From Octopus sinensis (Eukaryota), in the NCBI RefSeq assembly GCF_006345805.1, contig NC_043019.1:29883360-29947359 (forward strand): a DNA stretch of 64,000 bases. The letters are read 5' to 3'. Of this stretch, positions 855 to 64,000 are shown in pieces (position 1 is the stretch's first letter; every line of letters begins with the position of its first letter). Below the pieces are notes generated by a model. It did no database searches and had not been told where the DNA came from. It saw nothing but the letters and a program-made list of their open reading frames with translations. A program made the position numbers and the translations under genes.

Positions 855-1216
855 ATGGAAGTGAACATCGCTGGACAGTCGAAACCAGTGGAAGTGACTT
901 GTGTTGCAGAGGTGAAGCATCTGGATATTGGGGTGTCCAATACGCTAAATGGAGGAGATACGTCTACATCGGGGGCATATGATGACACGGCTTGTGAAGG
1001 AGACCGATTGTGTGGCTGGTTGTCAGTGCGGCCCAACACCAAGCTTTTGCCTAAAATAAACAAACAAAGATATTTTGTGTTCTCCGAAAAAACATGTAAA
1101 CTTTATCATTACCGGAGTCAACACGACATGCTTCCTTTGGGAGAAATTGATATCTACAATGCTTCTTTCAACTTCGAGGCCAGCAATTTGGATAAACCCG
1201 GCCTGTTCGAAATCAG
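855..1216 (+). CDS. TBC1D2: First coding exon of a PH-domain protein, TBC1D2/TBC1D2B-like Rab-GAP
   Basis: ATG at 855 in strong context (gttATGg) with in-frame TAG at 843-845. Translation LCGWLSV..KQRYFVFSEKTCKLYHYRSQHDMLPLGEIDIYNASF..FEIR resembles the N-terminal PH domain of TBC1D2B as recalled (LCGYL..RWFVFD..CYLYYFKSPQDALPLGHLDIADACF). It ends at a canonical donor AG|GTAAGC (1216/1217, phase 2). Orthology is from memory, not a search. Confidence 0.75.
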
Positions 1217-11948: not shown

Positions 11949-12102
11949 GGCTGTGTGGTAAGTTGCTTGCTTATCAACCACATCGTTCCGGGTTCATTCC
12001 CACTGCGTGGCACCTTGGGCAAGTTTCTTCTACTATAGCCTCGGGCCGACCAAAGCCTTGTGAGTGGATTTGGTAGACGGAAACTGAAAGAAGCCTGTCG
12101 TA

Positions 12103-12141
<39 letters not shown>

Positions 12142-12352
12142 GTGTGTGTGCGTGTGTTTGTGTGTCTGTGTTTGTCCCCCAACATCACTTGACAACCGAT
12201 GGTGTTTACATCCCTGTAATTTAGCAGTTTGGTAAAAGAGACCAATAGAATAAGTACTAGGCTTCCAAAGAATAAGTCCTGGGGTCAATTTGTCAACTAA
12301 AGGTGGTGTTCCAGCATGGCCACAGTCAAATGACTGAAACACGTAAAAGAGT
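11949..12352 (+). mobile_element. SINE family 3 within the mariner relic
   Basis: Same structure; begins directly after the mariner left-TIR stub. Confidence 0.8.
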
Positions 12353-15855: not shown

Positions 15856-16503
15856 TTGAACTATTGGTGACCCAATGAGTCAAGGGTAGTTTCGTACTAT
15901 GTCAAATTATACATCATACACTTCTTTAAAGCATTTAAATTTACTTTGTGGTGCAATCTCAATATATTTGTAGTATGAATCTCTATCTGTACTTCTCTTT
16001 TTGGTGCACTGGAGATTAAGCAAAAATTGCTGGTGCACTCTACTATGGAAACTTCAAATCAAACCATTTTGAAGCTAAATATTTAGAAAAAAATATATGT
16101 ACAAAATTCTTTTTTGGAACTTGATCTCAAATCACACACAAAGCTATAAATAACAGCATGTAAATATTGCACTGGAAAACCTTTTTGGAAAGAAAAAGTC
16201 GAAGGCTGCCCATGGGACACAAACCTACAACTTTTCTCAACATGTTACTATTTTTTGTAGCCTTCAATTTTTTTGTAGCTTTCAATGCTTTGTAGCCTTC
16301 AATTTTATATCCAAGAGGGATTTTCAACCCAGTATTTGCTTGCTATTATTTATATCTTTATGTAAAGGTGTCAAGCTGGCAGAATTGTTACTGCACTAGG
16401 CAAAATACTCAGCAGCATATTGTCTGTCTTTACGTTCTGAGTTCAAATTCTGCTGAGGTTGACTTTGCCTTTCATCCTTTTGAGTTCGATAATATAAATA
16501 CCT

Positions 16504-16733
16504 ATTTCTTTACTACCCACAAGGGGCTAAACACAGAGAGGACAAACAAGGACAGACAAAGAGATTAAGTCGATTATATCGACCCCAGTGCGTAACTGGT
16601 ACTTATTTAATCGACCCCGAAAGGATGAAAGGCAGAGTCGACCTCGGCGGAATTTGAACTCAGAATGTAGCGGCAGACAAAATACGGCTATGCGTTTCAC
16701 CCGGCGTGCTAATGTTTCTGCCAGCTTGCCGCC
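16504..16733 (-). mobile_element. SINE family 2 (ggcggcgagctggcag...gtagtaaagaaata) inside an older relative
   Basis: TSD gataatataaa(t/c)acc; the flanks form an older plus-strand copy starting near 16370. Confidence 0.85.
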
Positions 16734-17194
16734 TTTGATAATATAAACACCAGTTGAACACTGAGGTGGATGTATTGACTTACACCCTTCTCCCCAAATT
16801 GCTAGCCTTGTGCCAAAATTTAAAACGATTCATAGATTTATGTGTGCTTCAAGATCCGGTTCAAAAACAGAATTGCTTCACCTTCTCTCAACAATTTATG
16901 AATTCTTTTGATGTCAACAATATACAAAATTATCACTTGCTTTGTTTTATTAGTCATACTTGTATACTTACAGTATTATGAATAACTTGTCTTTCAAGAG
17001 GCTTAAGTATTAGTCTAGTTTTTCGAAAGCCTGAAATTATATTTTTCAAAACCTACAATACACTTACATATCCTTAGTGGTGCAGCCGGGTACAAAACTG
17101 TACCCTTTCACAAACACAACTTCTATATATTTAACATGTTATGTCTATTAATGCGTTATTTGGTTTCTATTTCAAAAGTAATATTATATAATAT

Positions 17195-17512
17195 ATAGGT
17201 GCATGTGTGACTGTATGGTAAGAGGTTTCCTTCTCAACAACATCATTCTGGGTTCAGTCCCATTGCGTGGAACCTTGGGCAAGTGTCTTCTACTAAAGCC
17301 TTGGGCCAACCAAAGTCTTGTGAGTGAATTTGGTAGATGTAAACTGAAAGAAGCCTGTCAGCATGACCATGTGGTAAGAAGCTTGCTTCCTAACCACATG
17401 GTTCTGGGTTCAGTCCCACTGCATAGCACCTTGGGCAAGTGTCTTCTACTATAGCCTTGGGCCAACTAAAGCCTTGCAAGTGGATTTGGTTGATGGAAAC
17501 TGAAAGAAGCCT

Positions 17513-17558
<46 letters not shown>

Positions 17559-18372
17559 TATGTGTGTGTCTCTGTGTCTGTGTTTGTCCCCCCGACCATA
17601 GCTTGACAACCAATGCCGGTGTGTTTATGTCACCGTAACTTAGCACTTCGGCAAAAGAGACTAATAGCATAAGTACCAGGCTTACAAAGAATAAGTCCTG
17701 GGGTTGATTTATTCGACTAAAAGACAGTGCTCCAGCATGGCTGCTGTCTAATCACCTTGTGTTTTGTTCCTGAGCAAAGCACTTCATTTTGTGTTGCTCT
17801 GTGATCATTTTGACATCTGATATGTGGCACCCGTTGCACACCTGTACAGGTAATGTCGATCTGATGGAAGTAATGAGCTTATGTCTACACAAATATTTGA
17901 TCACTATAAACAAATCATTTGGTTGTTCGGTAAGAAATTGTTGAAACCTCATACATCACCTGACGATGGGAGAATCCATCATATATTGGCTGTGTGGTAA
18001 GTAGCTTGCTAACCAACCACATGGTTCCAGGTTCAGTCCCACTGCGTGGCATCTTGGGCAAGTGTCTTCTGCTATAGCCCCGGGCTGACCAATGCCTTGT
18101 GAGTGGATTTGGTAGATGGAAACTGAAAGAAGCCTGTTGTATATATGTGTGTGTATGTGTTTGTGTGTCTGTGTTTGTCCCCCTAGAATTGCTTGACAAC
18201 CGATGCTGGTGTGTTTACGTCCCCGTCACTTAGCGGTTCGGCAAAAGAGACCGATAGAAAAGTACTAGACTTACAAAGAATAAGTCCTGGAGTCGATTTG
18301 CTCGACTAAAGGCGGTGCTCCAGCATGGCTGCAGTCAAATGACTGAAATAAGTAAAAGAGAGAAAAGAGAGA
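17195..18372 (+). mobile_element. Cluster of SINE family 3 copies and another SINE
   Basis: Partial head 17195-17360, copy 17365-17745, other family 17755-17975, full copy 17988-18372. Confidence 0.75.
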
Positions 18373-20022: not shown

Positions 20023-20530
20023 ACAATATTTGAGCTGGTGGTGCTTAAGAGATCACAGCAGAAATACCCAGCGTTATTCAGGATTAAAATGGCATAGTTT
20101 GTACATATATTACAGGTATGTTGAAATAGGTGATATGGGGAAAGTGAAGCATTGACAACAAAAACATTTGTGGAGTAAATAATGAGATAATTTGACTAAA
20201 TGACATGTCATGCGTCCATTTGGAGTAAATCTAGGCCCTAACCTATCATGGAAAATTGGAGTGGGAGGTGGGTAAGTGATTTTTGAATGCACTGAAAAGA
20301 TGTCAATGGATATACTCTCCTTTGCAGTGGTCGGTGGTATGGTTCACAGTCGAATGAATGTAGGTGTAATGTAAATGGGTACATTCTGCAAATGAGCTAC
20401 AATGGGAGACAGCAATAGGGAAGCGAACTGTTGAAATGTTGGAGAAGGTGGCGGTAGAATAAGAAACATAAAGTGAACCACAGACACATACACATTCATA
20501 TACAAAATGTGGCAACACTCATAGATATAT

Positions 20531-20760
20531 ATTTCTTTACTACCCACAAGGGGCTAAACACAGAGAGGGCAAACAAGGACAGACAAAGGGATTAAGTCGA
20601 TTACATCGACCCCAGTGCACAACTGGTACTTAATTTATCGACCCCGAAAGGATGAAAGGCAAAGTCGACCTCGGCGGAATTTGAACTCAGAACGTAACGG
20701 CAGACGAAATACGGCCACGCATTTCACCCGGCGTGCTAACGTTTCTGCCAGCTCGCCGCC
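20531..20760 (-). mobile_element. SINE family 2
   Basis: Full copy; TSD tcatagatata. Confidence 0.85.
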
Positions 20761-21154
20761 TCATAGATATAGTAAGACAAACTCACACAGATATACATAG
20801 CATTTCACTTCATGTTTTTTTCCTTTATTGCATGTATATAAGTGTGTAGATGTGTGTTTTAATCCAAATGAAAAAAAAAAAATTATCATACATGCACACA
20901 CATACACTCTCACATACAGTCATATACATATAATAAGAGAGACACATACACAGATATACATTCATGCATGTCAGTTGTCACATATGTATGTGTAGATGTG
21001 TGTGTGTTTAATAATGTACATAACGTGGAAACATACACGCACACTCACAGACACATACACCCTTGCAAACACACTCATATAAAATGTCCTGTACTATAAT
21101 TGACTATAGAAAGATTATCTGTATGATAATCCACATAGCCATGCCTGCGCCTAT

Positions 21155-23506: not shown

Positions 23507-23912
23507 CTCCTTACTCTTTTACTTGTTTCAGTCATGTGACTGTGACCATGCTGGAGCACTGCCTTTTAGTCGAGCAAATCGACTCCAGGACTTTGTAAGC
23601 CTAGTATTTATTCTATCGGTCTCTTTTGCCGAACCGCTAAGTTACGGGGACATAAACACACCAGCATCGGTTGTCAAGCGATGTTGTGGGGACAAACACA
23701 GACACACAAACATATACATACACATATATATATACATACATATATACGATGGGCTTCTTTTAGTTTCCGTCTACCAAATCCACTCACAAGGCTTTGGTTG
23801 GCCCGAGGCTATAGTAGAAGACACTTGCCCAAGGTGCCATGCAGTGGGACTGAACCCGGAACCATGTGGTTTGTAAGCAAGCTACTTACCACACAACCAC
23901 TCCTACGTCTAT
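23507..23912 (-). mobile_element. SINE family 3
   Basis: Same structure. Confidence 0.82.
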
Positions 23913-26042: not shown

Positions 26043-26211
26043 TAAAGGCATAGGAGTGGCTGTGTGGTAAGTAGCTTGCTTACGAACCACATGGTTCTGG
26101 GTTCAGTTCCATTCTGTGGCACCTTGGGCAAGTGTCTTCTGCTATAGCCTTGTGCCGACCAAAGCCTTGTGAGTGGATTTGGTAGATGGAAACTGAAAGA
26201 AGGCTGTCGTA

Positions 26212-26260
<49 letters not shown>

Positions 26261-26470
26261 ATATGTTTGTGTGTCTGTGTTTGTCCCTCCCAACATCGCT
26301 TGACAACTGATGCTGGTGTGTTTATGTCCCCGTAACTTAGCGGTCCGGCAAAAGAGACCGATAGAATAAGTACTATTCTTATAAGCCCTGTGGTCGATTT
26401 GCTCGACTAAAAGTGGTGCTCCAGCATAGCCACAGTCACATGACTGAAACAAGTAAAAGAATAAAGAGTA
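26043..26470 (+). mobile_element. SINE family 3
   Basis: Same structure. Confidence 0.82.
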
Positions 26471-31152: not shown

Positions 31153-31904
31153 TTGATGATAATAATAGTTTGTTATAAAAGATTGTAGTTTAACTGTTTC
31201 GACACCAACTTCCCTGAGACTGACTCTAGTTCTCTGATTCAAAACCTCTGATACAAATGTTTTCATATTTAAATCAGAACTGTTCATCATGATTTCATGT
31301 GAAAAACCTTTTGTTGTGCTCAATGCAGCAGCTTACCAATAAAAAATTTATTTCACTAAATTATTGATTATTTTTCAAAATTAATTGAAACACATGGACA
31401 GTGTATTTCATTACAAATACAATAATGAATGTGTTAATTATGTCTAGCTTTGGTTTCAGATAGTTCTGTATTGTGCTGAAGATATATTATGTTGCAGTTA
31501 ATACAAAATTGTGGCTGACTAACATTTCATGTAATTCTATATTGCATCTAAAATGCATCAGGTTGCAGTAAAACTGTATTCTTAAAGAATTATGGTTTTC
31601 CGTAGTTCTATTGGGTGCAGCATATTCTTTTATTCTTTTACTTGTTTCAGTAATTTGACTGTGGCCATGCTGGAGCACCGCCTTGAAGGGTTTTAGTCAA
31701 ACAAATTGATGCTAGGACTTATTTTTTTTTTAAAGCTTAGTACTTATTTTATCGGTCGCTTTTGCCAAACTGCTAAGTTACGGGGATGTAAACACACTAA
31801 CACCGGTTGTCAATTGGAGATGGGGAGGAAACAAACACAGACACTAAAGCACATACACATAGATATATTCATATATCTCTGAACTTCATTTTATGTTTTA
31901 GGGG

Positions 31905-32395
31905 CATTCTTTTCATTCTGTTCATTCTGTGCATTCTGCTCATTCTGTTCATTCTGTTCATTCTGTGCATTCTGTGCATTCTGTTCATTCTGTGCATTCT
32001 GTTCATTCTGTTCATTCTGTGCATTCTGTTCATTCTGTGCATTCTGTGCATTCTGTTCATTCTGTGCATTCTGTGCATTCTGTTCATTCTGTGCCTTCTG
32101 TGCATTCTATTCATTCTGTTCATTCTGTGCATTCTGTGCATTTTATTCATTCTGTTCATTCTGTGCATTCTGTTCATTCTGTGCATTCTGTTCATTCTGT
32201 GCATTCTGTGCATTCTGTTCATTCTGTTCATTCTGTGCATTCTGTTCATTCTGTGCATTCTGTGCATTCTGTTCATTCTGTGCCTTCTGTGCATTCTATT
32301 CATTCTGTTCATTCTGTGCATTCTGTGCATTCTATTCATTCTGTGCATTCTATTCATTCTGTTCATTCTGTTCATTCTGTGCATTCTGCTCATTC
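31905..32395. repeat. 9-bp minisatellite (CATTCTGTT/CATTCTGTG)n
   Basis: About 54 units read directly. Confidence 0.97.
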
Positions 32396-32408
32396 AAAGC
32401 TCATCTTA

Positions 32409-33900
32409 GAGATAAACAGGAAGAACACCAATTAGGAATAATGTTAAAGCATCCTTCTCCACTCATAAGGGCTGGTTTCCCAGTTTCTGTGGCATATGTA
32501 TATATTTACCATCCTGGACGGGACGCTGGTTTATCACAGGAGCAATGTGAAATGAAGTGTTTTGCTCAAGAGCACAATGCATCGCCCAGTCCAGGAATTG
32601 AAACTGCAATCTTATGATCATGAATTGAACACCCTAACCACTAGACCACAAGTCTCCAGGAATAATTTTGTATGAGATAAACAGGAGAAACATAAACTAG
32701 GAATAATATTAGAGCATCCTTATCCAGTATTTTGGTCTCAAAAGGGCTGGCTTCCCGGTTTCTGTAGCATATATAATATATATGTACTCCCTGAACAGGA
32801 TGCTGGTTCATTGCAGGATTATTCATTTTTACCAGCTTAGTAGACCTAAGCAACATGAAGTGAAGTATTTTGCTCAAGAATGTAATGCATTGCCTAGTCC
32901 AGGAACTGAAACCACAATCTTATGATCATGAGTTGAACATTATTACCATTAGGTCACACATCTCCAGGAATAATGCTGCACGAGATAAACAGGAAGAATA
33001 TCAGGAATAATATTAGAGCATCCTTCTTGAGTCCTATGGAATCATAAGTGCTGGCTTCCTGGTTTCTGTGGTGTATATATATATTTACCCACTGAATAGG
33101 ATGCTGATTCATCCAGGATTACTCTTTTTTGCCAGCTGAGTAGCTTGAAGCAACATGAAATGAAGTATTTTGCTGAAGAGCATAATGCATCGCCTAGTCC
33201 AGGAATTGAAACTGCAATCTTATGATCATGAGTCGAATACTTTTACCACTCGGCTACATACTTCCAGGAATAAAGCTGCACGAGATAAACAGAAGGAATA
33301 TCAACTAAGAACAATGTTGCAACAGATAAGCAGGAATAATATCAGGAATGATATTAGAGCATCCTTCTTGAGTCTTATGGAATCATAAGGGCTGCTTTCC
33401 TGGTTTCTGTGGTGTAGGCGGTGAGCTGGCAGAAACGTTAGCGTGCCGGGCAAAATGCATAGCCGTTTTTTGTCTGTCGTTAAGTTCTGAGTTCAAATTC
33501 CGCCGAGGTCGACTTTGCCTCTCATCCTCTCGGGGTCGATAAATAAAGTACCAGTTTCGCACTGGGTCCATGTAGTCGACTCAATCCCTTTGTCTGTCGT
33601 TGTTTTGTCCCCTCTATGTTTAGCCCCTTGTGGGTAGTAAAGAAATATATATATTTACCCACTGAATAGGATGCTGATTCATCCAGGATTACTCATTTTT
33701 GCCAGCTGAGTAGCTTGAAGCAACATGAAATGATGTATTTTGTGGATGTACATAATGCATCGCCTAGTCCAGGAATTGAAACTGCAATCTTATGATCATG
33801 AGTCGAATACTTTTACCACTAGGCTACACACCTCTAGGAATAATAATATGCTGCATGAGATAAACAGAAGGAATATCCACTAAGAATAATGTTGATTAAG
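32409..33900. repeat. Tandem array of ~265-310 bp units containing a reverse family 4-like SINE
   Basis: The unit marker gagataaacag recurs at 32409, 32674, 32982, 33282 and 33857. Confidence 0.85.
33417..33646 (+). mobile_element. SINE family 2 inserted in a tandem array unit
   Basis: The neighbouring unit (~33070) shows the empty site gtggtgta|tatatatttacccactg. Confidence 0.85.
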
Positions 33901-38484: not shown

Positions 38485-38902
38485 GAGCAGGAGTGGCTGT
38501 GTGGTAAGTAGCTTGCTTACCAACCACATGGTTCCGGGTTCAGTCCCACTGTGTGGCACCTTGGGCAAGTGTCTTCTACTATAGCCTCGAGCCAACCAAA
38601 GCCTTGTGAGTGGATTTGGTAGACGGAAACTGAAAGAAGTCCGTCGTATATATGTATATGTATATATATGTATGTGTGCGTGTATGTTTGTGTGTCTGTG
38701 TTTGTCCCCCTAGCATTGCTTGACAACCGATGCTGGTGTGTTTACGGCCCCGTCACTTAGCGGTTCGGCAAAAGAGACCGATAGAATAAGTACTGGGCTT
38801 ACAAAGAATAAGTCCCGGGGTCGAGTTGCTCGACTAAAGGCGGTGCTCCAGCATGGCCGCAGTCAAATGACTGAAACAAGTAAAAGAGTAAAAGAATAAA
38901 GA
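38485..38902 (+). mobile_element. SINE family 3
   Basis: Near-consensus copy. Confidence 0.85.
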
Positions 38903-39639
38903 GTGTGCAGAGACAATGCAATATCAGAGCAGCAATGGTGCTGTAATAGAGCAGTAACGAGAATTGTTACAGTTCAATGTCAGGAGAACAAAGAGCAGTC
39001 AGAGAACCATGTCTCACATTACTGCTATCAACTTGACACTGAGTGTAATCAAAGGGAAATATTGCCCGGCCGAATTGTAAATACTTTAAGCGTACTAATC
39101 TACAGGTATTATAGATTAATGTATTCATACCTGTTTGAGATTAGATCATATCACAGAGAACGCCGCCGAAGTCAATTTTAAATGATATGATTGATTTTTG
39201 TTTCGTTTTATGTACTTTAATTAATAAAGCTGTTAATTATTCAGTGCTGTCGAGAACATAGACGCTCATATCATTTTCATAAATTACCATAATATAAATG
39301 TTTAGCTCTTTTAACATTTGGTTTTATTTCGTCAGATGTAATGCTTATTGCTTTTTTATTCACGTTGTTTTGAATCAATCGTGCATTATTTCATAGCTTT
39401 GAGATTTTGATGATATCACCACCGTCGTCATTGTTTCATGTCTATTTTCCATGCTGGCATGGGTCGGACGGCTTGATAGGAGTTGGAAAGGCCAGGAGCT
39501 GCAACAGGTTCCATAGTCTGTTTTGGTTTGGTTTCTACAGGCTGGATGTCTTTTCTAATGCCAATCACTTTACAGAGTGTACTAGGTGCATTTTATGTGG
39601 TGCTAGAACCAGTGTGTTTTATGTGGAACCATTATCAGT

Positions 39640-40190
39640 GCATTTTACTTGGCACCATCACCAGTACTTTTTACATGGCTCCATCACCAGTGCTTTTTAC
39701 GTGGCTCCACCACCAGTGCTTTAATGTGGCTCCATCACCAGTGCTTTTTACATGGCTCCATCACCAGTGCTTTTTACGTGACACCATCACCAGTGCTTTT
39801 TACGTGGCTCCACCACCAGTGCTTTAATGTGGCTCCATCACCAGTGATTTTTACATGGCTCCATCACCAGTGCTTTTTACGTGACACCATCACCAGTGCT
39901 TTAATGTGAATCCATCACCAGTGCTTTTTACGTGGCTCCACCACCAGTGCTTTAATGTGGCACCATCACCAGTGCTTTTTACGTGGCTCCATCACCAGTG
40001 CTTTTTATGTGGCACCACCACCAGTGCTTTAATGTGGCTCCATCACCAGTGATTTTTACATGGCTCCATCACCAGTGCGTTTTACGTGGCACCACCACCA
40101 GTGCTTTAATGTGAATCCATCACCAGTGATTTTTACATGGCACCATCACCAGTGCTTTTTACATAGCACCACTACCAGTGCCTTTTATAT
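39640..40190. repeat. 25/26-bp minisatellite (CCATCACCAGTGCTTTTTACGTGGCT)n
   Basis: About 20 variant units read directly. Confidence 0.95.
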
Positions 40191-40374
40191 CACATTAAAT
40201 AAGCTATATCACATTGTCCTAGTGAAATAAAAGAGTTTTAAAAATTGATTTTTTTCATTTTAACCTATTTTCAATCATCTGTAACAATTTAAAAGTAATA
40301 TTCAGAAATTTGGGTTAAACCTGTTGTTTGGGACATCAATAAACATGAAATTTTGATGGGAGATTTAAATTTAA

Positions 40375-40699: not shown

Positions 40700-41390
40700 G
40701 TTGTAGTGGTAGTGGTGGTGATGATGATGATTGTGATAGCTGTTGTGATGGAAGTGATTATGGTGGTCTAGTGCTAGAAACTACACCAATGATAATGATA
40801 AAGGTTAAGGTGATAGTGGCGTAGGTGGTAGTGATGGTAGTGGTGGTGATGGTGGTGGCGGCAATGGTTGTAGGTGGTGGTGGCAGCGATGGTGGTGGTG
40901 ATGGTGGTGGTGGTGGTGGTAGTGGCAATGGTAATAATGATGGTGGTGGTGATGGTAATGGTGGTGGTAGTGGCAGCGATGGGGGTGGTGATGGTGGTGG
41001 TGGTCGTCGTGATGGTGGTGGTGGTGGTCGTGATGGTGGTGGTGGTGGTGGTCGTGATGGTGGTGATTGTGGTGGTGGTGATGGTGGTGGTGATGGTGGT
41101 GGTGGTGTTGATGGTAGTGATGATGATGATGTTGGTGATGGTTGTGGTGGTGGTGGTGATGGTGATGGCAACGATTACAGTGGTTGTAGAAACAACAACA
41201 ATGCTGCTGCTACTGCTACTGAAGAAGATGATTGTGGTGTTGGTGGTAGTGGTGGTAAGGGGAACAATAATGGCAGTAGTGGCCACAACAACTACCGCAA
41301 TGACAACGATGACGACATCGCTGATGATGATGATGATATCGATAATGACGACGACGACAACGACGACATCGACGACGATGCTGATGATGA
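40700..41390. repeat. (GGT)n/(GAT)n/(GAC)n trinucleotide tract
   Basis: Read directly. Confidence 0.95.
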
Positions 41391-41693
41391 ATTATTCCAG
41401 CAGAGGTTAGAAAAAGAGATTCCTATCTTGATGTATGGATTTCTATCAGGACAAAAATCCATACATCGCTCTTTTTGCTGTCTATGTTCCTCCATAGCAT
41501 GTCTTCTTGCGGTGTTTAGTTTCACTAAACACTTTTATTGTTTAACTCTATACACTACTGATAGTATTTATTCTTGTTGTTGCGGTTGTTGTTTAATCTC
41601 CTCCAGCTCAGCCCTGACTCAGCTGTGAGGCAGTCATGCGATCGAACATGTTCCAGCTGTGACCATCCTGCCTGTTATGCACATATGTTCTTT

Positions 41694-46747: not shown

Positions 46748-47950
46748 ATAATAATAATAATAATTGTGTACAGTGCTCAGGTGCACTACAACTCATCTAA
46801 AGTGTATATATAATCAGGTGTAGTTTCGACGGATTTCGGGAAGCATGAGGGCCTTAAAGGATGCAGTGTCATGGCAGTCAACAACTGATGCAAGCAGTTT
46901 ATTCTACGCTTCAGCAACCCTGAGCATGAAAAAATGTTTCCGAAAGTCATGGGAGCTGTGCTGTTTTCTGACTTTGTAGGCATGTCCACGTGTGTTAGAC
47001 ACATGGAGATCAAGAAGGTGTTCAGTGTTGTTGTTGGTAAGGTGGTTGATAACCTTGTGGGTGTTTACCAAGTCCGTCGCTAGACGCCGGAGCTTCAGTG
47101 AATCCATGCCCAGGGAAACAAGGCGCTCAGAATATGGTAGGTGTTTGATGGAGGGTATGCGTTTGGTTGCACGTCTCTGGACAGATTCCAGGAGGTCAAT
47201 GTTCTGAGCAAGATAGGGATTCCAAACTGATGATGCGAATTCCAAGTGTGGTCGTACCATAGCTGTATACAGTTTTAAATAGATGGCTGGAGAGCGGCTA
47301 ACAAAAGTCTTGCTGAGTGATGCCAAGACACCCTCGGCCTTCTTGACAATTTTAGAGATATGCTTTGTCCAACGCAAATCACTGCTGACAGTGATGCCTA
47401 GGTCACGCTCGCAAGAGGATTTCTTGATATCAGTGTTGTGGAGGGAGTATGTGGACGCAGGTTTTTTCTCCCAAAATGCATGGTGGTACACTTGTCCACA
47501 GCCAGTTTCAGTTGCCAGTCTGTGATCCATTGCTGCATTGTGTCTAGGTCTGATTGCAGGAAAGAGTTGTAGACATCAGGATCAGTCCTCTTGATTTCAA
47601 GGTACAGCTTGATGTCGTCTGCATATTTCAATACTGTGGCATTCTTTAAATTGGCATCTATGTCATTAATGTATGCCACAAACAGGAGGGGACCAAGGAC
47701 AGATCCCTGTGGTACACCCGATGACATCTCATATGGTGTAGAGTGCTGTCCTAGAACTGTGACTACCTCCTTTCGGCTGAGGATGAAGGATTTCAACCAG
47801 TTAAAAAGGTCATCCCCCACACCCATTGCAGAGAGTTTCACCATAAGCCTTTTGTGTGGCACAGAGTTGAAAGCCTTAGCAAAGTCAAGGTAGACAACAT
47901 CCACCCATGAGCCACTGTCAGTGATCTGAGTAATGTCCTCAAGGAACTCA
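46748..47950 (-). mobile_element. 5'-truncated CR1/L2-group LINE (reverse transcriptase 3' part)
   Basis: YLDFAKAF, SGVPQGSVLGPLLF, YADD RT motifs, then RPHLEFASSVWNPY..ESVQRRATKRI. One frameshift near 47530, premature TAG at 46904, 3' UTR ending in an (ATT)n tail. Confidence 0.92.
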
Positions 47951-48926: not shown

Positions 48927-49456
48927 ATCACCACCTTGCACACAACTAAATAATGCAAGGCATTTGTGTCTGACATTCAAACAAGTTTTTTTTTTCCTAA
49001 TCCAGCATTCCATCTTTTAGTCTGGTGTTCCAATGTTTCTGCTTGCTCCACTGCCTGTCTTAAATATTGATCTACTTGCAGTTGGGTAAATAGCTTCTAT
49101 TTCTCAGCATCAATTAGTTATTTTGAAAGATATCATTAACAAATCTATCCTGATTCATTGAACTGACCTTAAATCTGTTTCACATGTCTGCTTCCATACT
49201 GGGATTTCTTTTTTAGAAGAATTAATTTTCATCCATATTTGAGGTTGTATTGATTTCTAAAATACACAAGGCAAGCAGCAGGAAGGATTTAGTCTCGTTT
49301 TGTTCTCTACAATAATTCTATTCATGTCTATAAGGCCTGGGAGGAATATTAATAGACTTGACTAGTGCTTTATTTTATAAACCTTGGATGGATGCAAGGC
49401 AAATATGACCTCGATTTGTTTGAACTCAGAACATAAAGCATCATAACTAATTACCT

Positions 49457-49686
49457 ATTTCTTTACTACCCACAAGGAGCTACACACAGAGGGGACAAAC
49501 AAGGACAGACAAACGGATTAAGTCATTTACATCGACCCCAGTGCGTAACTGGTACTTTATTTATCGACCCCGAAAGGATGAATGGCAAAGTCGATCTTAG
49601 CGGAATTTGAACTCAGAACGTAACGGCAGACGAAATACGGCTACGCATTTCGCCCGGCGTGCTAACATTTCTGCCAGCTTGTTGCT
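49457..49686 (-). mobile_element. SINE family 2
   Basis: TSD agcatcataactaa(t/a)tacc. Confidence 0.8.
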
Positions 49687-50736
49687 AAATACCACAGCAT
49701 CATAACTAAATACCACAAGGTGTTTCTCTGTCACTCTGAACCAGGGGAATCCCCAACCATTTTCTGCCAATGGACCCTTCTGATTCCTGTTTTAATCTAC
49801 TGGACCTTAATAGCCATTCAATGCTTAAAAATTCCTATTATGTTTATATTATATTCATATAATTAAATATTATTAAGAACTGTATAAAACAATTATTAAA
49901 ATATTTCGTGTATTTATTTTTCATCTTTTACTTGTTTCACTAATTAGACTACGGCCATGCTGGGGCATCACCTTGAAGAATTTTAGTCAAACAAATCGAC
50001 CCCTAGTACATTCTTTTGTTCTTTCTCTGGTTTCAACCAGTTGACTGTGGCCATGCTGGAGCACTGCCTTGAAGGGTTTTAGTTAAACAAATTGACCCCA
50101 GGACTAATTTGTTAAAGCCAAGTACTTATTCTATCAACCTCTTTTGATGAACCACTAAGTAATGGGGACGTAAACACATCAGCCCCTGTTGTCAAGCGGT
50201 GATGGGGGAGACAAAGACAGACACAATGACACACACACACACAGATATATACACTCACACACATATATATATATATGTGTGTATATATATATATATGATG
50301 GGCTTCTTTCAGTTGCTGTCTACCAAATCTACTCACAAGGCTTTGGTTGGCCTGAGGCTATAGTAGAAGACACTTGTCCAAGGTTCCACAAGCAAGCTTT
50401 ACCACATAGCCAAATTTTTAAAGCCTGGTACTTGTTCTCTTTGCCTCTTTTGCTGAACTGCTAAGTTACAGGAACATAAACACAGCAGTGTTGTAGAAGG
50501 ATAACCAGTTTTATTGCACATAAATTTTAACAACAAAATCTTTTATGGACCCCCTCCCCCCATGGGTTATATGGACCCTGGTTAAGAAGCACTGCTCTAA
50601 AGAGTCTGCCATATTAATACCAATATTTGACAAGTACTTATTTCACCTACTTACAGATAGATGAAAGGTAAACCTGACCTTGATGGGGTTTGAACTCAGA
50701 GAGCAAAGGGTCCTCACAAAATACCAAAAGGTATAA

Positions 50737-58180: not shown

Positions 58181-58372
58181 CCACACGCAGAGGGGACAAG
58201 CAAGGACAGACAAACGGATTAAGTCGATTATATTGACGCCAATGTGTAACTGGTACTTATTTAATTGACCCCAAAAGGATGAAAGGTAAAGTCGACCTCG
58301 GTGGAATTTGAACTCAGAATGTAAAAGCAGACAAAATACCGCTAAGCATTTCACCCAGCATGCTAACGTTTC

Positions 58373-58604
58373 TTATTTCTTTACTGCCCACAAGGGGCTA
58401 CACACAGAGGGAACAAACAAAGACAGACAAACGGATTAAGTCGATTATATCGACCCCAGTGCATAACTGGTACTTAATTTATTGACCCTGAAAGGATGAA
58501 AGGCTAAGTAGACCTTGGTGGAATTTGAACTCAGAACATAAGGACAGACAAAATACTGCTAAGCATTTTGCCCAGCATGCTAAAATTTCTGCGAGCTCAC
58601 CGCC
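58373..58604 (-). mobile_element. SINE family 2
   Basis: Full copy, tandem with the 57755-58372 copy. Confidence 0.8.
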
Positions 58605-58722
58605 TTCTATGACATTGTATCTATGGCAATTATATACATGTCATCTTTTTCTTCATTTTCTTTCTTTTTCTCTCCTTGTGTACCAATGGCCTGTGTAGCA
58701 GGTTCAATTATATATATATATA

Positions 58723-59099
58723 CACTTGCGTCAGAAATTAATTAGCACTTCTCAAATTTCTACATTAAATAGGTTAAATCAATTAACCTATGAGCTGTTC
58801 AAAACGTCTTATGCGATGAGAAAACTTAGTATGGTGTGATTTCGGTCCTTGCGAGGCGCTACCTATATCTATTAAACAAAGGAAGATTTGTCTGCATCCA
58901 CACTCCAATTTGTTGCACTGCTATGTCAACATCATAAGGCTGTAGACTCTCAAACTGCTCTGCAAACAAAGTTACATCATCGTTCTGCGCAACAGTGAAC
59001 TCGCAACAAAGCAATAGTTCGAGATATGGCCACTAGGTGACAGCACATACCTTGAGTGAAGAGCAAATCAAGGGTGCTAATTAATTTCTGACGGTAGTG
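58723..59099. mobile_element. Tc1/mariner-type MITE
   Basis: TIRs cacttgcgtcagaaattaattagcac / gtgctaattaatttctgacggtagtg; inserted in (TA)n. Confidence 0.85.
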
Positions 59100-59126
59100 T
59101 ATATATATATATATATATATATATTT

Positions 59127-59846
59127 ATAATTAATCAATATAGGGTGGCAAAAAAAATTTTGTAGAATTTTCTTGCCACCAGCGGCCTAGTGGGAAAAAA
59201 TTAAATAGTCATAGACCATTTTTAAGTTCAACATCAACAATCAAGGAACGGCCATAATAGGCCATTCACCCACTAGAAATAACAGCCAAAGCTTCAACCG
59301 CAAATAAAAGTCAATTCCGTAAACAGGAGAAAATTTAAAAAACATTTACCCTGTAAATGGACTTAAAAATGGTCTATGACTATTTAATTTTTTCCCACTA
59401 GGCCGCTGGTGGCAAGAAAATTCTACAAAATTTTTTTGCCACCCTATATTGATTAATTATGAATTTTCTGGTTAATTCCGTAATGGAATCGACGGCTTAT
59501 ATTTATTTGCTGCCGATAAATTTGGCGCGAGTGCGATGATTTGAAAATTTTAGGTCAGATATTAACTTGGCAGGGTCGGAAATGCCTCGTGAAAATATCT
59601 GTTCCGACTTGTGGCTATTTCTTACTGAAGAATCTGAGGGCCTATGGAAGATTGGCTTGATTTAATTTAATCAGGTTAGTTTACCATTAAACAGCAGACG
59701 AAACGGTGCATCGTATAAGAAATTACAGGGTAAATGTTTTTTAAATTTTCTCCTGTTTACGGAATTGACTTTTATTTGCGGTTGAAGCTTTGGCTGTTAT
59801 TTCTAGTGGGTGAATGGCCTATTATGGCCGTTCCTTGATTGTTGAT
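59127..59846 (+). mobile_element. Hammerhead-bearing non-autonomous retroelement (retrozyme/Penelope pLTR-like) with inverted partial copy
   Basis: A (59127-59227) and A' (59361-59460), and B (59233-59356) and B' (59723-59846), are near-perfect inverted pairs. The hammerhead lies between A' and B'. (TA)n on both flanks. Confidence 0.65.
59617..59723 (+). ncRNA. Type I hammerhead ribozyme, canonical core
   Basis: Stem I ATTTCTTA (59617-24)/TAAGAAAT (59716-23); CTGAAGA (59625-31); stem II TCTG/CAGA with a long capping hairpin; GAAA (59700-03); stem III ACGG-tgca-TCGT; cleavage triplet GTA (59713-15). Confidence 0.85.
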
Positions 59847-59885
59847 ATATATATATATATATATATTATACACATACATACATAC

Positions 59886-59959
<74 letters not shown>

Positions 59960-60186
59960 TTCAGTAGTATCGGGCTCACAATCACGAGGTAGTGAGTTCG
60001 ATTCCTGGACTGGGCTATGTGTTGTGTTCTTAAGCAAGACACTTTATTTCATGCTGCTCCAGTTCGCTCAGCTGTAGAAATGGGTTGCAACATCACTGGC
60101 GCCAAGCTGTATCAGCCTTTGCCTTTTCCTTTTTATAATTATCTGCGCAGCTTAGCTTGAGCTGAGATTAAATTTGATGGTGTTTC

Positions 60187-60238
60187 CGCTGTTGCTGCTG
60201 CTCCTGTTGCTGCTGCAGCTGTTGCTGTTGCTGTTGTT

Positions 60239-60269
<31 letters not shown>

Positions 60270-60322
60270 TTGTTGTTGTTGTTGTAGTTGTTGCTGCTGC
60301 TGCTGCTGCTGCTGTCGTTGTT
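60187..60322. repeat. (CTG)n/(TTG)n trinucleotide tract
   Basis: Read directly. Confidence 0.95.
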
Positions 60323-60369
60323 GGTCAACATAAGATCAATTCTGATTGAGCAGACCAATTTCTTATCTT

Positions 60370-61172
60370 GTACTTGTTTTCAGTTGTTAGACTGCGGCCA
60401 TGCTGGGGCACTGCGTTGAAGGGTTCATTTGAACATATAAACCCCAGTATCTAGTTTTCAAGTCCGATACTTTTCATGTTGGTCACTTTTGCCAAACCAC
60501 TAAGATGTGGGGAGGTAAACAAACCAACACTAGTTGTCAAGTGGTGGTAGGGGACAAGCACACATGCATACACACAGACAAAAACACACACACATGACAG
60601 GCTTCTTCCAGTTTCCATCTATTAAATCCACTCACAAGGCTTGGTCAACCTGGAGCTATAGTAGAAGACATTTGCCCAAGGTGTTATGCAGTGGGATTGA
60701 GCCTGGAACCACGCACTTAAGAAGCAAACTTCTTACCACACAGCCACGCCTGTGCCTATACTCTTTTACTCTTTTACTTGTTTCAGCCATTTGACTGTGG
60801 CCACGCTGGAGCACCACCTTTAGTCGATCAAATCGACCCCAGGACTTATTCTTTGTAAGCCTAGTACTTATTCTATCGGTCCCTTTTGCCGAACCGCTAA
60901 GTTACAGGGACGTAAACACACTAACTTCGGTTGTCAAGCGATGTTGGGGGGGGGGGCAAACACAGACACACAAACATACACCCACACACACACACACACA
61001 TATATATGATGGGCTTCTTTCAGTTTCCGTCTACCAAATCCACTCACAAGGCTTTGGTCGGCCCGAGGCTACAGTAGAAGACACTTGCCCAAGGTGCCAC
61101 GCAGTGGGACCGAACCCGGAACCATGTAGTTCGTGAGCAAGCTACTTACCACACAGCCACGCCTGTGCCTAT
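60370..61172 (-). mobile_element. Two tandem SINE family 3 copies
   Basis: Old copy 60370-60760, younger copy 60761-61172. Confidence 0.8.
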
Positions 61173-62345: not shown

Positions 62346-63139
62346 TCTTTCAACTTCTGCCTACTAGATCTACTCACATGGCTTTGGATGCTTGTCCAAG
62401 GTACCACGCAATGGAACTGAACCCAGAGCCATGTTCTTCAGAAGCAAACTTCTTATTACACAGCCACGCCTGCTGTTATTGTTTTGTATGTGATTTGTTT
62501 TTGTCTTGTATGTTTTGGCTTGGTTGACCAAGTCTATTGTGAATTATCACTTCTGTCCCTTTCAACTGGGAATGGCAGCCAGTTTTCCTGTCTCTAGTCA
62601 CTATGGTGAAAGAGGTTGTCTAGTGGAAGAGGATGGCAGCGCAAGACACCGATATTTTCCACTTTGGTCAAGCTTTCATCACCTCTAGAAGTTCCACTTG
62701 AGAAGGAAAGTGAGGGTGGAGAGGGAGGGGCTCTCCTGCAGCATATTTGTCAAAATCTGGGTGACATTGGTGAAAATGACAAGAATGAATGGGTAACTGT
62801 AGGTTGGAGAATGATACTTGGGATAGGGTACTTGCCCTTGGTGGTCAGGATGATCTTAGATCTAGGGGATTCTTTGACTGGTCCTACTTGGAGGTCAGGG
62901 TGATCCTAGATCTAGGGGATTCTTTGACTGGTCCTACTTGGAGGCCCTCCTGTATCCAGAAGTCTGGTTAGTCCATATTACTCTGTTAGGAGCATTGGGT
63001 TGGTTTTCCTGGTTTCTCTGACACATATATTCCTTCCTGGATGGGACGCCAGTCTGTTGTAGGATTACTAATGTTTACCAGCTGAGTGGACTGGAAAATG
63101 TAAACCAAAGTGTTTTGCTCAAGAACACAATGTGTCCCC

Positions 63140-64000
63140 CAGCCCAGGAATCAAAACCACAGTGTTACGATCATGACTGAAACACCCTAACCACTAAACC
63201 ATGTGTCCCCACTGTTGATCAGTCCAGGAATTGAAACCACAATCTTTTGATCCTGAGTCCAACACCCTAACCACAATGCCATGCACTTCTGCTTTTGCCC
63301 AGCACAGGAATCAAAACCACAATTTTACTGTCATGATTGAAACCCCCTAACCACTAAGCCATGTGTCCCCACCGTTGTTCAGTCCAGGAATTGAAACCAG
63401 AATCTTTTGATCCTGAGTCCAACACCCTAACCACAATGCCATGCACTTCTGCTTTTGCCCAGCACAGGAATCAAAACCACAATTTTACTGTCATGATTGA
63501 AACCCCCTAACCACTAAGCCATGTGTCCCCACCGTTGTTCAGTCCAGGAATTGAAACCAGAATCTTTTGATCCTGAGTCCAACACCCTAACCACAATGCC
63601 ATGCACTTCTGCTTTTGCCCAGCACAGGAATCAAAACCACAATTTTACTGTCATGAATGTGACACCCTAACCACTAATCCATGTGTCCCCACCTTTGTTC
63701 AGTCCAGGAATTGAAACCACAATCTTTTGATCCTGAGTCCAACACCCTAACCACAATGCCATGCACTTCCGCTTTTGCCCAGCACAGGAATCAAAACCAC
63801 AATTTTACTGTCATGAATGTGACACCCTAACCACTAATCCATGCACCTCCACTATCGCCCAGTCCAGGAATTGAAACCACAGTCGTAGGATCATGAGTGT
63901 AACACCCTAACCACTAAACTATGTGTCCCCACTATTGCTCGGTCCAGGAATTGAAACCACAATCTTAAGATCATGAGTGCAATAGCCTAACCACTAGGCC
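63140..64000 (-). repeat. 80-bp satellite of tRNA-like SINE heads with 160-bp higher-order period
   Basis: Units start every 80 bp from 63140 to 63940; runs off the window. Confidence 0.92.

What the first reader, a model, noticed from the sequence alone, without database searches (positions are those of the whole stretch)
59617..59723. Complete type I hammerhead ribozyme, sense to the host gene intron
Seen: 8-bp stem I (ATTTCTTA/TAAGAAAT), core CTGAAGA, GAAA, stem III ACGG/TCGT with a TGCA loop, and a GUA triplet predicting cleavage after 59715. Stem II (TCTG/CAGA) is extended by a 19-bp hairpin (59644-59687) in which 18 of 19 positions pair, five by G-U wobble, which is the pattern of RNA-level rather than DNA-level symmetry. 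Known: C3-U4-G5-A6-N7-G8-A9, G12-A13-A14, A15.1-U16.1 and H17 define the hammerhead core, and all are present. The one deviation is A.C instead of G-C at 10.1/11.1. Inference: a possibly active self-cleaving RNA on the same strand as the TBC1D2-like pre-mRNA.
Basis: partly seen in the sequence, partly recalled or inferred. Interest (0 to 1): 0.9.

Follow-up and report, generated by a model that had tools for sequence, protein, structure and literature searches.

The report
Hammerhead ribozyme inside an octopus retroelement
The hammerhead self-cleaving RNA motif is really there, but it belongs to a young, non-coding mobile element of about 490 bases that landed in a TA repeat within intron 1 of the octopus TBC1D2B gene, which is a known kind of ribozyme-carrying retroelement and not a gene-specific ribozyme.

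Summary
It has an 8-bp stem I, CUGAAGA, GAAA, a 4-bp stem III with a UGCA loop, A17 at 59715, A.C at 10.1/11.1, and a 19-bp hairpin extending helix II with five G.U pairs. No Rfam hammerhead model detects it, even at permissive thresholds. A motif this good is expected about 1-3 times by chance in a genome of about 2.7 Gb, so context decides.

The window is Octopus sinensis TBC1D2B: exon 1 lies at 855-1217 and the rest is intron 1, sense to the motif. The motif sits in a 489-nt non-coding unit (59358-59846). A 234-nt inverted partial copy (59123-59356) abuts its 5' end. That copy runs across the unit's end-to-start junction, so the template was circular or multimeric. TA repeats flank both sides, and the two copies differ at only 2 positions.

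These are the published hallmarks of Penelope-like-element insertion and of animal non-LTR retrozymes, which carry type I hammerheads. I read it as a young, PLE-mobilised, retrozyme-like monomer whose ribozyme may be weakened. I could reach no other copies, so family conservation and activity remain untested. It is a new member of a known kind, of modest interest.

The parts
59100..59125 (.). (TA)n microsatellite, left target flank
   Evidence: Sequence read directly. AT-rich or (TA)n targets are reported for Penelope-like elements (PMC8557442; PMC11167929).
59123..59230 (-). Arm A: inverted copy of unit positions 134-240, i.e. the reverse complement of A' (59358-59464)
   Evidence: 97% identity over 108 nt. 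The alignment shows one transition and one T-run indel. A third difference lies at the very end, where the copy merges into the TA repeat.
59231..59232 (-). Two junction bases (GT in element sense) joining the end of B' to the start of A' in the inverted copy
   Evidence: the inverted copy reads ...GATTGTTGAT-GT-TGAACTTAAAAATGG..., which is contiguous B'-GT-A'.
59233..59356 (-). Arm B: inverted copy of unit positions 8-131, i.e. the reverse complement of B' (59723-59846). Its inner end lies 7 nt downstream of the predicted ribozyme cleavage site.
   Evidence: 124/124 identical.
59358..59846 (+). Main copy: one complete unit (A'-C-B', 489 nt), non-coding, 36.7% G+C for the reconstructed 491-nt unit, strongly structured as RNA
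   Evidence: Boundaries. There is no stop-free stretch longer than 52 codons. MFE is -146.5 kcal/mol, z -5.25. No other copy exists in the window.
59617..59723 (+). Type I hammerhead motif (stems I-III plus core)
   Evidence: Not detected by Rfam.
59625..59631 (+). Core C3-U4-G5-A6-A7-G8-A9 (CUGAAGA)
59632..59699 (+). Helix II: A.C at 10.1/11.1, then UCUG/CAGA, a 7x7 internal loop, and a 19-bp hairpin at 59644-59687 (18 pairs, 5 G.U)
59700..59715 (+). G12-A13-A14, then helix III (ACGG/UCGU) with the palindromic tetraloop UGCA, then A17. Cleavage is predicted between 59715 and 59716.
   Evidence: A palindromic loop 3 is a hallmark of metazoan type I hammerheads (PMC4209133).
59608..59613 (+). 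Distal extension of stem I (pairs with 59724-59729), separated from the 8-bp stem by the GCU bulge at 59614-59616
59847..59957 (.). (TA)n/(ACAT)n microsatellite, right target flank

Best explanation
The locus is one insertion of a short, non-coding, hammerhead-bearing retroelement in Octopus sinensis. It is an animal non-LTR retrozyme, that is, a non-autonomous derivative of a Penelope-like element (PLE).

Shown:
- A complete 489-nt unit lies at 59358-59846 (+) and carries the type I hammerhead near its 3' third.
- A 234-nt inverted partial copy (59123-59356) abuts its 5' end. This copy is collinear with the end of the unit followed by its beginning (B'-GT-A').
- Both outer ends lie in (TA)n.

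Inferred mechanism:
- The template RNA was longer than one unit, or circular, with a 491-nt period. Position 1 is 59716, the 5' end left by ribozyme cleavage.
- A PLE reverse transcriptase/GIY-YIG endonuclease supplied in trans nicked both strands of the TA repeat and primed cDNA from each strand at two different internal AU-rich sites (unit positions 131 and 240).
- The bottom-strand cDNA ran one full turn (131 back to 134). The top-strand cDNA ran from 240 to 8, seven bases short of the ribozyme-generated 5' end. Joining the two gave the inverted-plus-direct structure.

In the element's life cycle the hammerhead would cut multimeric transcripts to unit length for circularisation. At this locus there is only one ribozyme. 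It can at most cut the TBC1D2B intron 1 RNA once, and it may be attenuated by A.C at 10.1/11.1. Its position in the gene is incidental.
For: - Motif: it is complete and thermodynamically competitive. There were no equally good hits in 300 window shuffles or in 400 Mb of random sequence.
- Architecture: B and B' are 124/124 identical, A and A' differ at only 2 real positions, and the junction B'-GT-A' is contiguous in the inverted copy. The interleaved order A-B-A'-C-B' cannot come from nested foldback insertions. It needs a permuted (circular or tandem) template.
- Unit properties: the main copy equals one period minus 2 nt. The unit has no ORF, 36.7% G+C, and a strongly structured RNA with 21 G.U pairs on the plus strand against 5 on the minus strand.
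- PLE literature: PLE insertions form partial tandems, often with an inverted 5'-truncated copy directly at the 5' end. They prefer (TA)n, and canonical PLEs carry hammerheads in their repeats (PMC8557442). A purified PLE protein nicks and extends both DNA strands, prefers AT-rich DNA, and starts reverse transcription at two internal RNA sites (PMC11167929).
- Retrozyme literature: animal retrozymes are low-GC repeats with type I hammerheads, 51-972 bp long, often monomeric, and related to PLE repeats (PMC7229834; bioRxiv 10.64898/2026.07.22.740005).
- Ribozyme details: metazoan type I hammerheads have a palindromic loop 3, as here (UGCA) (PMC4209133).
- Cephalopods: they are known to carry type I hammerheads, with 235 Rfam hits in the giant squid (PMC6962438).
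Against: - No second copy of the element could be examined, so there is no family consensus, no covariation and no copy number.
- No Rfam hammerhead model matches.
- G10.1-C11.1, described as highly conserved, is replaced by A.C.
- The locus is not a head-to-tail tandem and holds only one ribozyme.
- The two cDNA start sites are 109 nt apart, whereas the PLE 'tail' is usually 30-40 nt.
- No PLE ORF is present in the window. The only RT fragment there matches Pfam RVT_1, and I judged it LINE-like only from its motifs.
- Structure is significant on the minus strand too (z -4.27).
Confidence: 0.65

Rival explanations
1. The hammerhead-like motif arose by chance inside a structured repeat, such as a foldback or MITE-like DNA element or a decayed palindrome. 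No ribozyme function has ever existed at this locus or in its relatives.
For: - Rfam hammerhead models fail even at permissive thresholds.
- There is an A.C mismatch at the conserved 10.1/11.1 pair.
- In metagenomes, 120+ chance matches to the two core halves plus the helix II base were found, and 6 of them had rudimentary stems I and III.
- The unit is also significantly structured on the minus strand.
Against: - The motif coincides with an element that independently shows the insertion signature described for hammerhead-bearing retroelements: an inverted 5' copy, a permuted junction and a TA target.
- The motif lies on the strand with the better RNA fold.
- Helix III has the palindromic tetraloop typical of metazoan type I hammerheads.
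- The composite has no terminal inverted repeats at its outer ends (and direct reading).
- The interleaved repeat order cannot arise from nested foldback insertions.
Confidence: 0.17
2. It is a host-selected intronic ribozyme, comparable to the amniote HH9/HH10 intronic hammerheads. It would have been exapted to regulate TBC1D2B pre-mRNA processing.
For: - The motif is in sense orientation in intron 1 of TBC1D2B.
- The motif is complete.
- An attenuated 10.1/11.1 pair could tune the cleavage rate.
Against: - The insertion is very young: its two copies differ at 2 of about 231 aligned positions. There has been little time for exaptation.
- It lies in a TA microsatellite next to other repeats.
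- Retrozymes are reported to be depleted from introns, which implies that such insertions are selected against and not recruited (bioRxiv 10.64898/2026.07.22.740005).
- Neither the HH9 nor the HH10 Rfam model matches.
Confidence: 0.03
3. The inverted partial copy is an artefact of assembly or of DNA replication or repair (a palindromic mis-join). Only a simple single-copy insertion exists.
For: PLE-type tandem and inverted structures are noted to cause problems in shotgun assemblies (PMC8557442). The arms are perfectly or almost perfectly identical.
Against: - The inverted copy carries its own differences from the main copy and two junction bases (GT) that the main copy lacks. A simple mis-join of reads from the main copy would not create these.
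- This rival would not change the reading of the hammerhead or of the element.
Confidence: 0.05

Closest known systems
Animal non-LTR retrozymes (Cervera and de la Pena 2020, PMC7229834; Li, Clavereau and Pollet 2026, bioRxiv 10.64898/2026.07.22.740005)
   Same: - A non-coding, low-GC unit (36.7%) of a few hundred nucleotides carrying a sense type I hammerhead.
- A highly structured RNA.
- Evidence for a circular or multimeric template.
- Monomeric dispersed copies are common.
- The family is linked to PLE machinery.
   Different: - This locus is not a head-to-tail array. It holds one direct unit plus an inverted 0.47 unit.
- The 491-nt unit is longer than the roughly 300-nt units described for coral, mussel and axolotl, though it falls within the 51-972 bp range reported for vertebrates.
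- Helix II carries an insertion of about 58 nt, and 10.1/11.1 is A.C.
- circRNA expression was not tested.
Penelope-like element insertions and their pLTR hammerheads (Cervera and de la Pena 2014, PMC4209133; Craig et al. 2021, PMC8557442; Frangieh et al. 2024, PMC11167929)
   Same: - An inverted 5'-truncated copy directly abuts the 5' end.
- The junction is of the partial-tandem type.
- The target is (TA)n or AT-rich.
- The two 3' ends differ, consistent with two internal RT start sites and priming from both DNA strands.
- The hammerhead lies in sense orientation within the repeat.
   Different: - There is no RT/GIY-YIG ORF, so the element is non-autonomous.
- Metazoan PLE min-hammerheads have almost no helix III and a bulged base between positions 9 and 10.1. 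This motif has a stable 4-bp helix III and an A.C mismatch instead of a bulge.
- The tail equivalent is 109 nt, not 30-40 nt.
Canonical metazoan type I hammerheads of Rfam Hammerhead_1 (RF00163), e.g. from Schistosoma Sm-alpha and newt satellite 2
   Same: - Type I topology.
- Identical core nucleotides.
- A-U at 15.1/16.1.
- A short helix III with a palindromic loop.
- A bulge in helix I that could serve as loop 1.
   Different: - It does not score against the Rfam model.
- Helix I is 8 bp before the bulge (canonical about 6 bp).
- Helix II is not capped by a small loop 2. It opens into a 7x7 internal loop and a 19-bp hairpin, so the canonical loop 1-loop 2 contacts are not recognisable.
Amniote intronic hammerheads HH9 and HH10 (RF02275, RF02277)
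   Same: A type I hammerhead in sense orientation within an intron of a protein-coding gene.
   Different: Those ribozymes are ultraconserved single-copy sequences. This one is a recent transposon insertion, and the Rfam models do not match it.

Membership tests
Hammerhead ribozyme, type I | Core C3-U4-G5-A6-N7-G8-A9 | tested here: met
   CUGAAGA at 59625-59631.
Hammerhead ribozyme, type I | G12-A13-A14, A15.1-U16.1 and H17 (not G) | tested here: met
   GAAA at 59700-59703, U59714, A59715.
Hammerhead ribozyme, type I | G10.1-C11.1 closing pair of helix II | tested here: not met
   The pair is A59632.C59699. It is described as highly conserved (PMC4209133). A U.U mismatch at this position is tolerated in the axolotl HHR_Amex2 (PMC7229834).
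Hammerhead ribozyme, type I | Three helices around the core with helix I open (5' and 3' ends in helix I) | tested here: met
   Helix I is 8 bp (plus 6 bp beyond a bulge), helix II is 4 bp plus the extension, and helix III is 4 bp. The constrained fold is -33.5 against an MFE of -34.3 kcal/mol.
Hammerhead ribozyme, type I | Loop 1-loop 2 tertiary contact | tested here: inconclusive
   A GCU bulge in helix I and a 7x7 internal loop in helix II exist at plausible distances. No canonical loop motifs are recognisable, and no 3D test was possible.
Hammerhead ribozyme, type I | Score at or above the gathering threshold of an Rfam hammerhead covariance model | tested here: not met
   No hammerhead family matched at gathering score or at E<=10 on 351 nt and 131 nt. 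The helix II insertion and the A.C pair are plausible causes, but I could not test that.
Hammerhead ribozyme, type I | Covariation in stems and conservation of the core among homologues | not testable with these tools
   No homologue was reachable. There is no eukaryotic genome search, and every indirect route failed.
Hammerhead ribozyme, type I | Mg2+-dependent self-cleavage 3' of H17 | not testable with these tools
   This needs an in vitro transcription and cleavage assay.
Animal non-LTR retrozyme | Head-to-tail tandem repeats, each with a type I hammerhead | tested here: inconclusive
   The locus has one direct unit with one hammerhead. However, the inverted copy preserves an end-to-start junction (B'-GT-A'), so the template was multimeric or circular. 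Monomers are common in described families.
Animal non-LTR retrozyme | Short non-coding unit with low G+C (<45%) | tested here: met
   The unit is 491 nt with 36.7% G+C and has no stop-free stretch longer than 52 codons.
Animal non-LTR retrozyme | Expression as linear and circular unit-length RNA | not testable with these tools
   No octopus RNA-seq could be searched.
Penelope-like element insertion signature | Inverted 5'-truncated copy immediately adjacent to the 5' end | tested here: met
   The inverted copy at 59123-59356 is separated from the main copy by one base. The feature is as described in PMC8557442.
Penelope-like element insertion signature | Insertion into (TA)n or AT-rich DNA | tested here: met
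   (TA)n lies at 59100-59125 and from 59847 onward.
Penelope-like element insertion signature | ORF encoding a telomerase-like RT and a GIY-YIG endonuclease | tested here: not met
   There is no ORF in the element. If it is mobilised by a PLE, it is non-autonomous.
Penelope-like element insertion signature | Optional 30-40 bp tail between two RT start sites | tested here: inconclusive
   The two copies end at different unit positions (131 and 240), which is the same logic, but the interval is 109 nt (PMC11167929).
Conserved intronic hammerhead (HH9/HH10 type) | Orthologous conservation across species at the same intronic site | not testable with these tools
   The Argonauta hians orthologue spans more than 100 kb and no DNA was returned. 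The Octopus sinensis protein is not on record for contig look-up. The near-identity of the two copies argues for a recent insertion.

The most novel reading that the evidence does not exclude
The locus may be a genomic footprint of reverse transcription of a circular hammerhead RNA. The direct copy is exactly one turn of a 491-nt circle minus 2 nt, as expected if the cDNA stopped on reaching its own start. The inverted copy crosses the closure point and ends 7 nt from the ribozyme cleavage site. If other copies show the same one-turn geometry, this would be direct sequence evidence for the long-proposed circRNA intermediate of animal retrozymes and PLEs. The family's hammerhead would be a variant that Rfam does not detect, with a long helix II insertion.
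Probability: 0.2. Interest if true: 0.6.

Novelty: new member of a known kind. Interest (0 to 1): 0.3.

Why it matters
The finding shows that a hammerhead in a gene intron is here a passenger of a mobile element and not a regulatory device of the gene.

It adds a cephalopod example of the hammerhead-bearing, PLE-dependent non-autonomous retroelements. Standard Rfam models miss this one because of its long helix II insertion and its A.C closing pair.

The insertion geometry is consistent with the biochemical finding that PLE proteins prime from both DNA strands at internal RNA sites. The features in question are one full period, an inverted copy that crosses the unit junction, and TA flanks on both sides. 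The geometry is also consistent with a circular or multimeric RNA template.

For the host, the locus places a possibly active self-cleaving RNA and two long near-perfect inverted repeats (107 and 124 bp) in the sense pre-mRNA of TBC1D2B. The repeats could form double-stranded RNA.

Tried and rejected
- **Rfam:** the whole window at gathering score and two permissive local scans returned only noise (WT1-AS_2, sR11, CRISPR repeats) and no hammerhead family.
- **Other copies in the window:** blastn with word size 7 found only the element itself and its inverted copy.
- **Other hammerheads in the window:** a relaxed min-hammerhead descriptor found none. A weak hit at 41377-41447 (stems of 4, 3 and 3 bp) in low-complexity sequence is at chance level.
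- **Other copies outside the window:**
  - Exact look-up of four ORFs in or beside the element gave nothing.
  - A chimeric six-frame peptide query against the 5.8-billion protein set gave nothing.
  - Three viral-contig scans gave nothing.
  - The metagenome scan used a pattern that was too loose. It returned 120+ chance matches, none related to the element.
  - A 19-mer scan of prokaryotic genomes gave 3 chance hits with no upstream core.
- **Orthologous locus:** the Octopus sinensis protein is not on record, and the Argonauta hians gene is too long for DNA to be returned.
- **tRNA or Pol III SINE origin:** ARAGORN found nothing in 58500-60500, and I saw no convincing A or B boxes.
- **Strand-specific RNA structure as proof of function:** downgraded. 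The minus strand is also significantly structured, and the plus/minus energy gap is only at about the 94th percentile of this region.
- **Nested foldback or MITE explanation:** rejected. The repeat order A-B-A'-C-B' is interleaved, and the composite has no terminal inverted repeats.
- **Snap-back self-priming of a single cDNA:** rejected. It predicts that the right end continues to unit position 240, which it does not.

Full report
**1. The observation**

- Stem I is AUUUCUUA (59617-59624) paired with UAAGAAAU (59716-59723).
- The core is CUGAAGA (59625-59631).
- Position 10.1/11.1 is A59632.C59699.
- Stem II is UCUG/CAGA (59633-59636 with 59695-59698).
- GAAA lies at 59700-59703.
- Stem III is ACGG/UCGU with loop UGCA (59703-59714).
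- A17 is at 59715, so cleavage is predicted between 59715 and 59716.
- The 59644-59687 hairpin forms 18 of 19 pairs with five G.U and one A.A.

A scripted descriptor finds this motif. The only other hit in the window is weak and at chance level (41377-41447). A fold constrained to the hammerhead topology is -33.5 kcal/mol against an MFE of -34.3. In that fold stem I continues past a GCU bulge into six more pairs (59608-59613 with 59724-59729).

**2. Is it more than chance?**

Within the window, clearly yes. There were no hits of this quality in 300 dinucleotide shuffles, and a loose descriptor gave 0.06 hits per shuffled window. There were also none in 400 Mb of composition-matched random sequence.

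The descriptor had to allow a mismatch at 10.1/11.1 and a long helix II. My analytic estimate is about 6e-5 per window. That means roughly 1-3 such motifs by chance in a genome of about 2.7 Gb (a size I took from memory, not from a tool). The looser class occurred 13 times per 400 Mb.

A metagenome scan for the two core halves plus the helix II base returned more than 120 chance matches. Six of them had rudimentary stems I and III. The motif alone is therefore not decisive at genome scale.

No Rfam hammerhead family matches, either at gathering score or at E<=10 in 351-nt and 131-nt scans.

**3. Where it is**

The ORF at 855-1217 (+) is 100% identical to residues 1-121 of TBC1 domain family member 2B isoform X3 of Octopus sinensis. 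No further exon of that protein is in the window.

**4. The context changes the interpretation**

The motif lies in a compound repeat:
- A = 59123-59230
- B = 59233-59356
- A' = 59358-59464, the reverse complement of A
- C = 59465-59722, unique in the window and holding the hammerhead
- B' = 59723-59846, the reverse complement of B, with 124/124 identity

Read in element sense, the upstream inverted segment is ...TTACAGGG...GTTGAT-GT-TGAACTT...ATTAT. This is B' followed directly by A'. The inverted copy therefore spans the junction between the end and the start of the direct copy, so the template was circular or multimeric with a period of 491 nt.

I number the unit from the predicted cleavage site, so position 1 is 59716. 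The direct copy then runs 134->491->131, which is one full period minus two bases. The inverted copy covers positions 8->240.

Other properties of the locus:
- Both outer ends lie in (TA)n.
- The interleaved order A-B-A'-C-B' cannot be produced by nested foldback insertions, and the composite has no terminal inverted repeats.
- The two copies differ by one transition and one homopolymer indel, so the insertion is young.
- The unit has no coding capacity and 36.7% G+C.
- The unit folds strongly: MFE -146.5 kcal/mol and z -5.25, with 21 G.U pairs.
- The minus strand is also significantly structured (z -4.27, 5 G.U). The plus/minus energy gap is only at about the 94th percentile of this repeat-rich region.

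**5. Comparison with what is known**

The architecture matches published descriptions of Penelope-like element (PLE) insertions:
[quoted passage not shown] They show a bias for (TA)n microsatellites, and canonical PLEs carry hammerheads in the terminal repeats (PMC8557442).
- A purified PLE protein nicks and extends both DNA strands, prefers AT-rich DNA, and starts reverse transcription at two internal RNA sites. This accounts for the variable 'tail' (PMC11167929).

It also matches what is reported for hammerhead-bearing repeats in animals:
- Type I hammerheads in animal genomes reside largely in short, low-GC, non-coding repeats called non-LTR retrozymes. These are expressed as circular RNAs (PMC7229834).
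- Retrozymes were recently argued to be non-autonomous derivatives of PLE repeats. Their consensus lengths are 51-972 bp and many copies are monomeric (bioRxiv 10.64898/2026.07.22.740005).
- Circular RNA templates for more-than-unit reverse transcription were already proposed in 2014 (PMC4209133).
- The palindromic loop 3 (UGCA) is a stated hallmark of metazoan type I hammerheads.
- Cephalopods are known to carry such ribozymes, with 235 Hammerhead_1 hits in the giant squid (PMC6962438).

**6. Most likely mechanism**

Shown: the motif, the unit, the permuted inverted copy and the TA flanks.

Inferred:
- An RNA of the element, either circular after hammerhead cleavage and ligation or a multimeric transcript, was copied by a PLE enzyme supplied in trans.
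- The enzyme nicked both strands of the TA repeat. cDNA synthesis started at two AU-rich internal sites: ...UUGAU at position 131 and ...UUAAUUAU at position 240.
- One cDNA went once around the template. The other ran to within 7 nt of the ribozyme-generated 5' end. Joining the two produced the inverted-plus-direct structure.

The hammerhead's role in the family would be to process transcripts to unit length. At this locus there is a single ribozyme, so no unit-length RNA can be released. At most, the TBC1D2B intron 1 RNA would be cut once.

The A.C at 10.1/11.1 replaces a pair described as highly conserved and probably weakens the ribozyme. A U.U mismatch at the base of helix II in an axolotl retrozyme hammerhead still allows cleavage. 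Whether the A is specific to this copy cannot be decided without other copies.

**7. Rivals**

- (a) A chance motif in a structured repeat, confidence 0.17. It is supported by the Rfam failure, the A.C pair and the genome-scale expectation. It is opposed by the coincidence with a retroelement architecture specific to hammerhead carriers, the matching strand and the palindromic loop 3.
- (b) A host-selected intronic ribozyme of the HH9/HH10 type, confidence 0.03. It is opposed by the youth of the insertion and by the reported depletion of retrozymes from introns.
- (c) An assembly or repair artefact creating the inverted copy, confidence 0.05. It is opposed by the copy-specific differences and by the GT junction bases that the main copy lacks.

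**8. Limits**

I could not reach any eukaryotic genome or transcriptome by nucleotide search. All indirect routes failed. Copy number, family consensus, covariation, expression and activity therefore remain untested.

**9. Verdict**

The feature is best filed as a new member of a known kind: a retrozyme-like, PLE-mobilised hammerhead element. Two details are mildly unusual. One is the hammerhead that Rfam does not detect, with its long helix II insertion and A.C closing pair. The other is the one-turn insertion geometry. Interest is 0.3.

Noticed in passing
window 58709-59113: A MITE-like element of about 405 bp lies directly upstream of the hammerhead element. It has 40-nt terminal inverted repeats that are 95% complementary (CACTTGCGTCAGAAATTAATTAGCAC...), and both ends are embedded in TA repeats. 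The same TA microsatellite tract has therefore collected at least two different insertions (I7).
   Followed up: no
window 59233-59356 with 59723-59846, and 59123-59230 with 59358-59464: In the sense TBC1D2B pre-mRNA these arms could form a perfect 124-bp duplex or a 107-bp near-perfect duplex. The two are mutually exclusive because they are interleaved. Such duplexes are plausible substrates for ADAR editing or small-RNA production in octopus. This is speculation; nothing was tested.
   Followed up: no
window 46904-47904 (-): Two overlapping ORFs (168 and 208 aa) of a reverse-transcriptase fragment. The 168-aa ORF matches Pfam RVT_1 at E 6e-26. The motifs look LINE-like, not Penelope-like, so this is not the autonomous partner of the hammerhead element.
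   Followed up: partly
window, e.g. 11949-12178, 17365-17594, 26058-26287, 38495-38724; 16494-16734, 20521-20761, 49447-49687, 58365-58605; 23591-23890, 60851-61150: At least three interspersed repeat families of about 230-300 bp occur 5-9 times each, in both orientations, at 65-92% identity. They are SINE-like, and many contain internal microsatellites (families D12, D14, D15). Intron 1 is densely populated with them.
   Followed up: no
window 59958-60130: A repeat immediately after the right-hand TA tract begins with a tRNA-like head (GGTTCAGTAGTATCGGGCTCACAATCACGAGGTAGTGAGTTCGATTCCTGGAC). ARAGORN does not call it a tRNA. It is probably the head of a tRNA-derived SINE.
   Followed up: partly
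window 31797-32440; 39566-40232; 63138-63997: Three tandem arrays: a 9-bp minisatellite with more than 50 copies, a repeat of about 26 bp (25-26 bp spacing), and an 80/160-bp satellite-like repeat that runs to the end of the window (D1, D9, D11). None of them contains a hammerhead motif.
   Followed up: partly
window 41377-41447 (+): A second, weak hammerhead-like match (stems of 4, 3 and 3 bp) lies inside a low-complexity GAT/GGT-rich stretch. It is at the level expected by chance (0.06 per shuffled window).
   Followed up: yes
L001 (Logan SRR25158153, 3397 nt): A transcript contig from a related, unnamed species encodes the TBC1D2B orthologue. It is 84% identical to the window's exon 1 peptide and about 68-70% identical over the full length to the Octopus sinensis and Argonauta hians proteins. 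In it the gene caller split the PH-domain part and the RabGAP-TBC part into two ORFs.
   Followed up: partly
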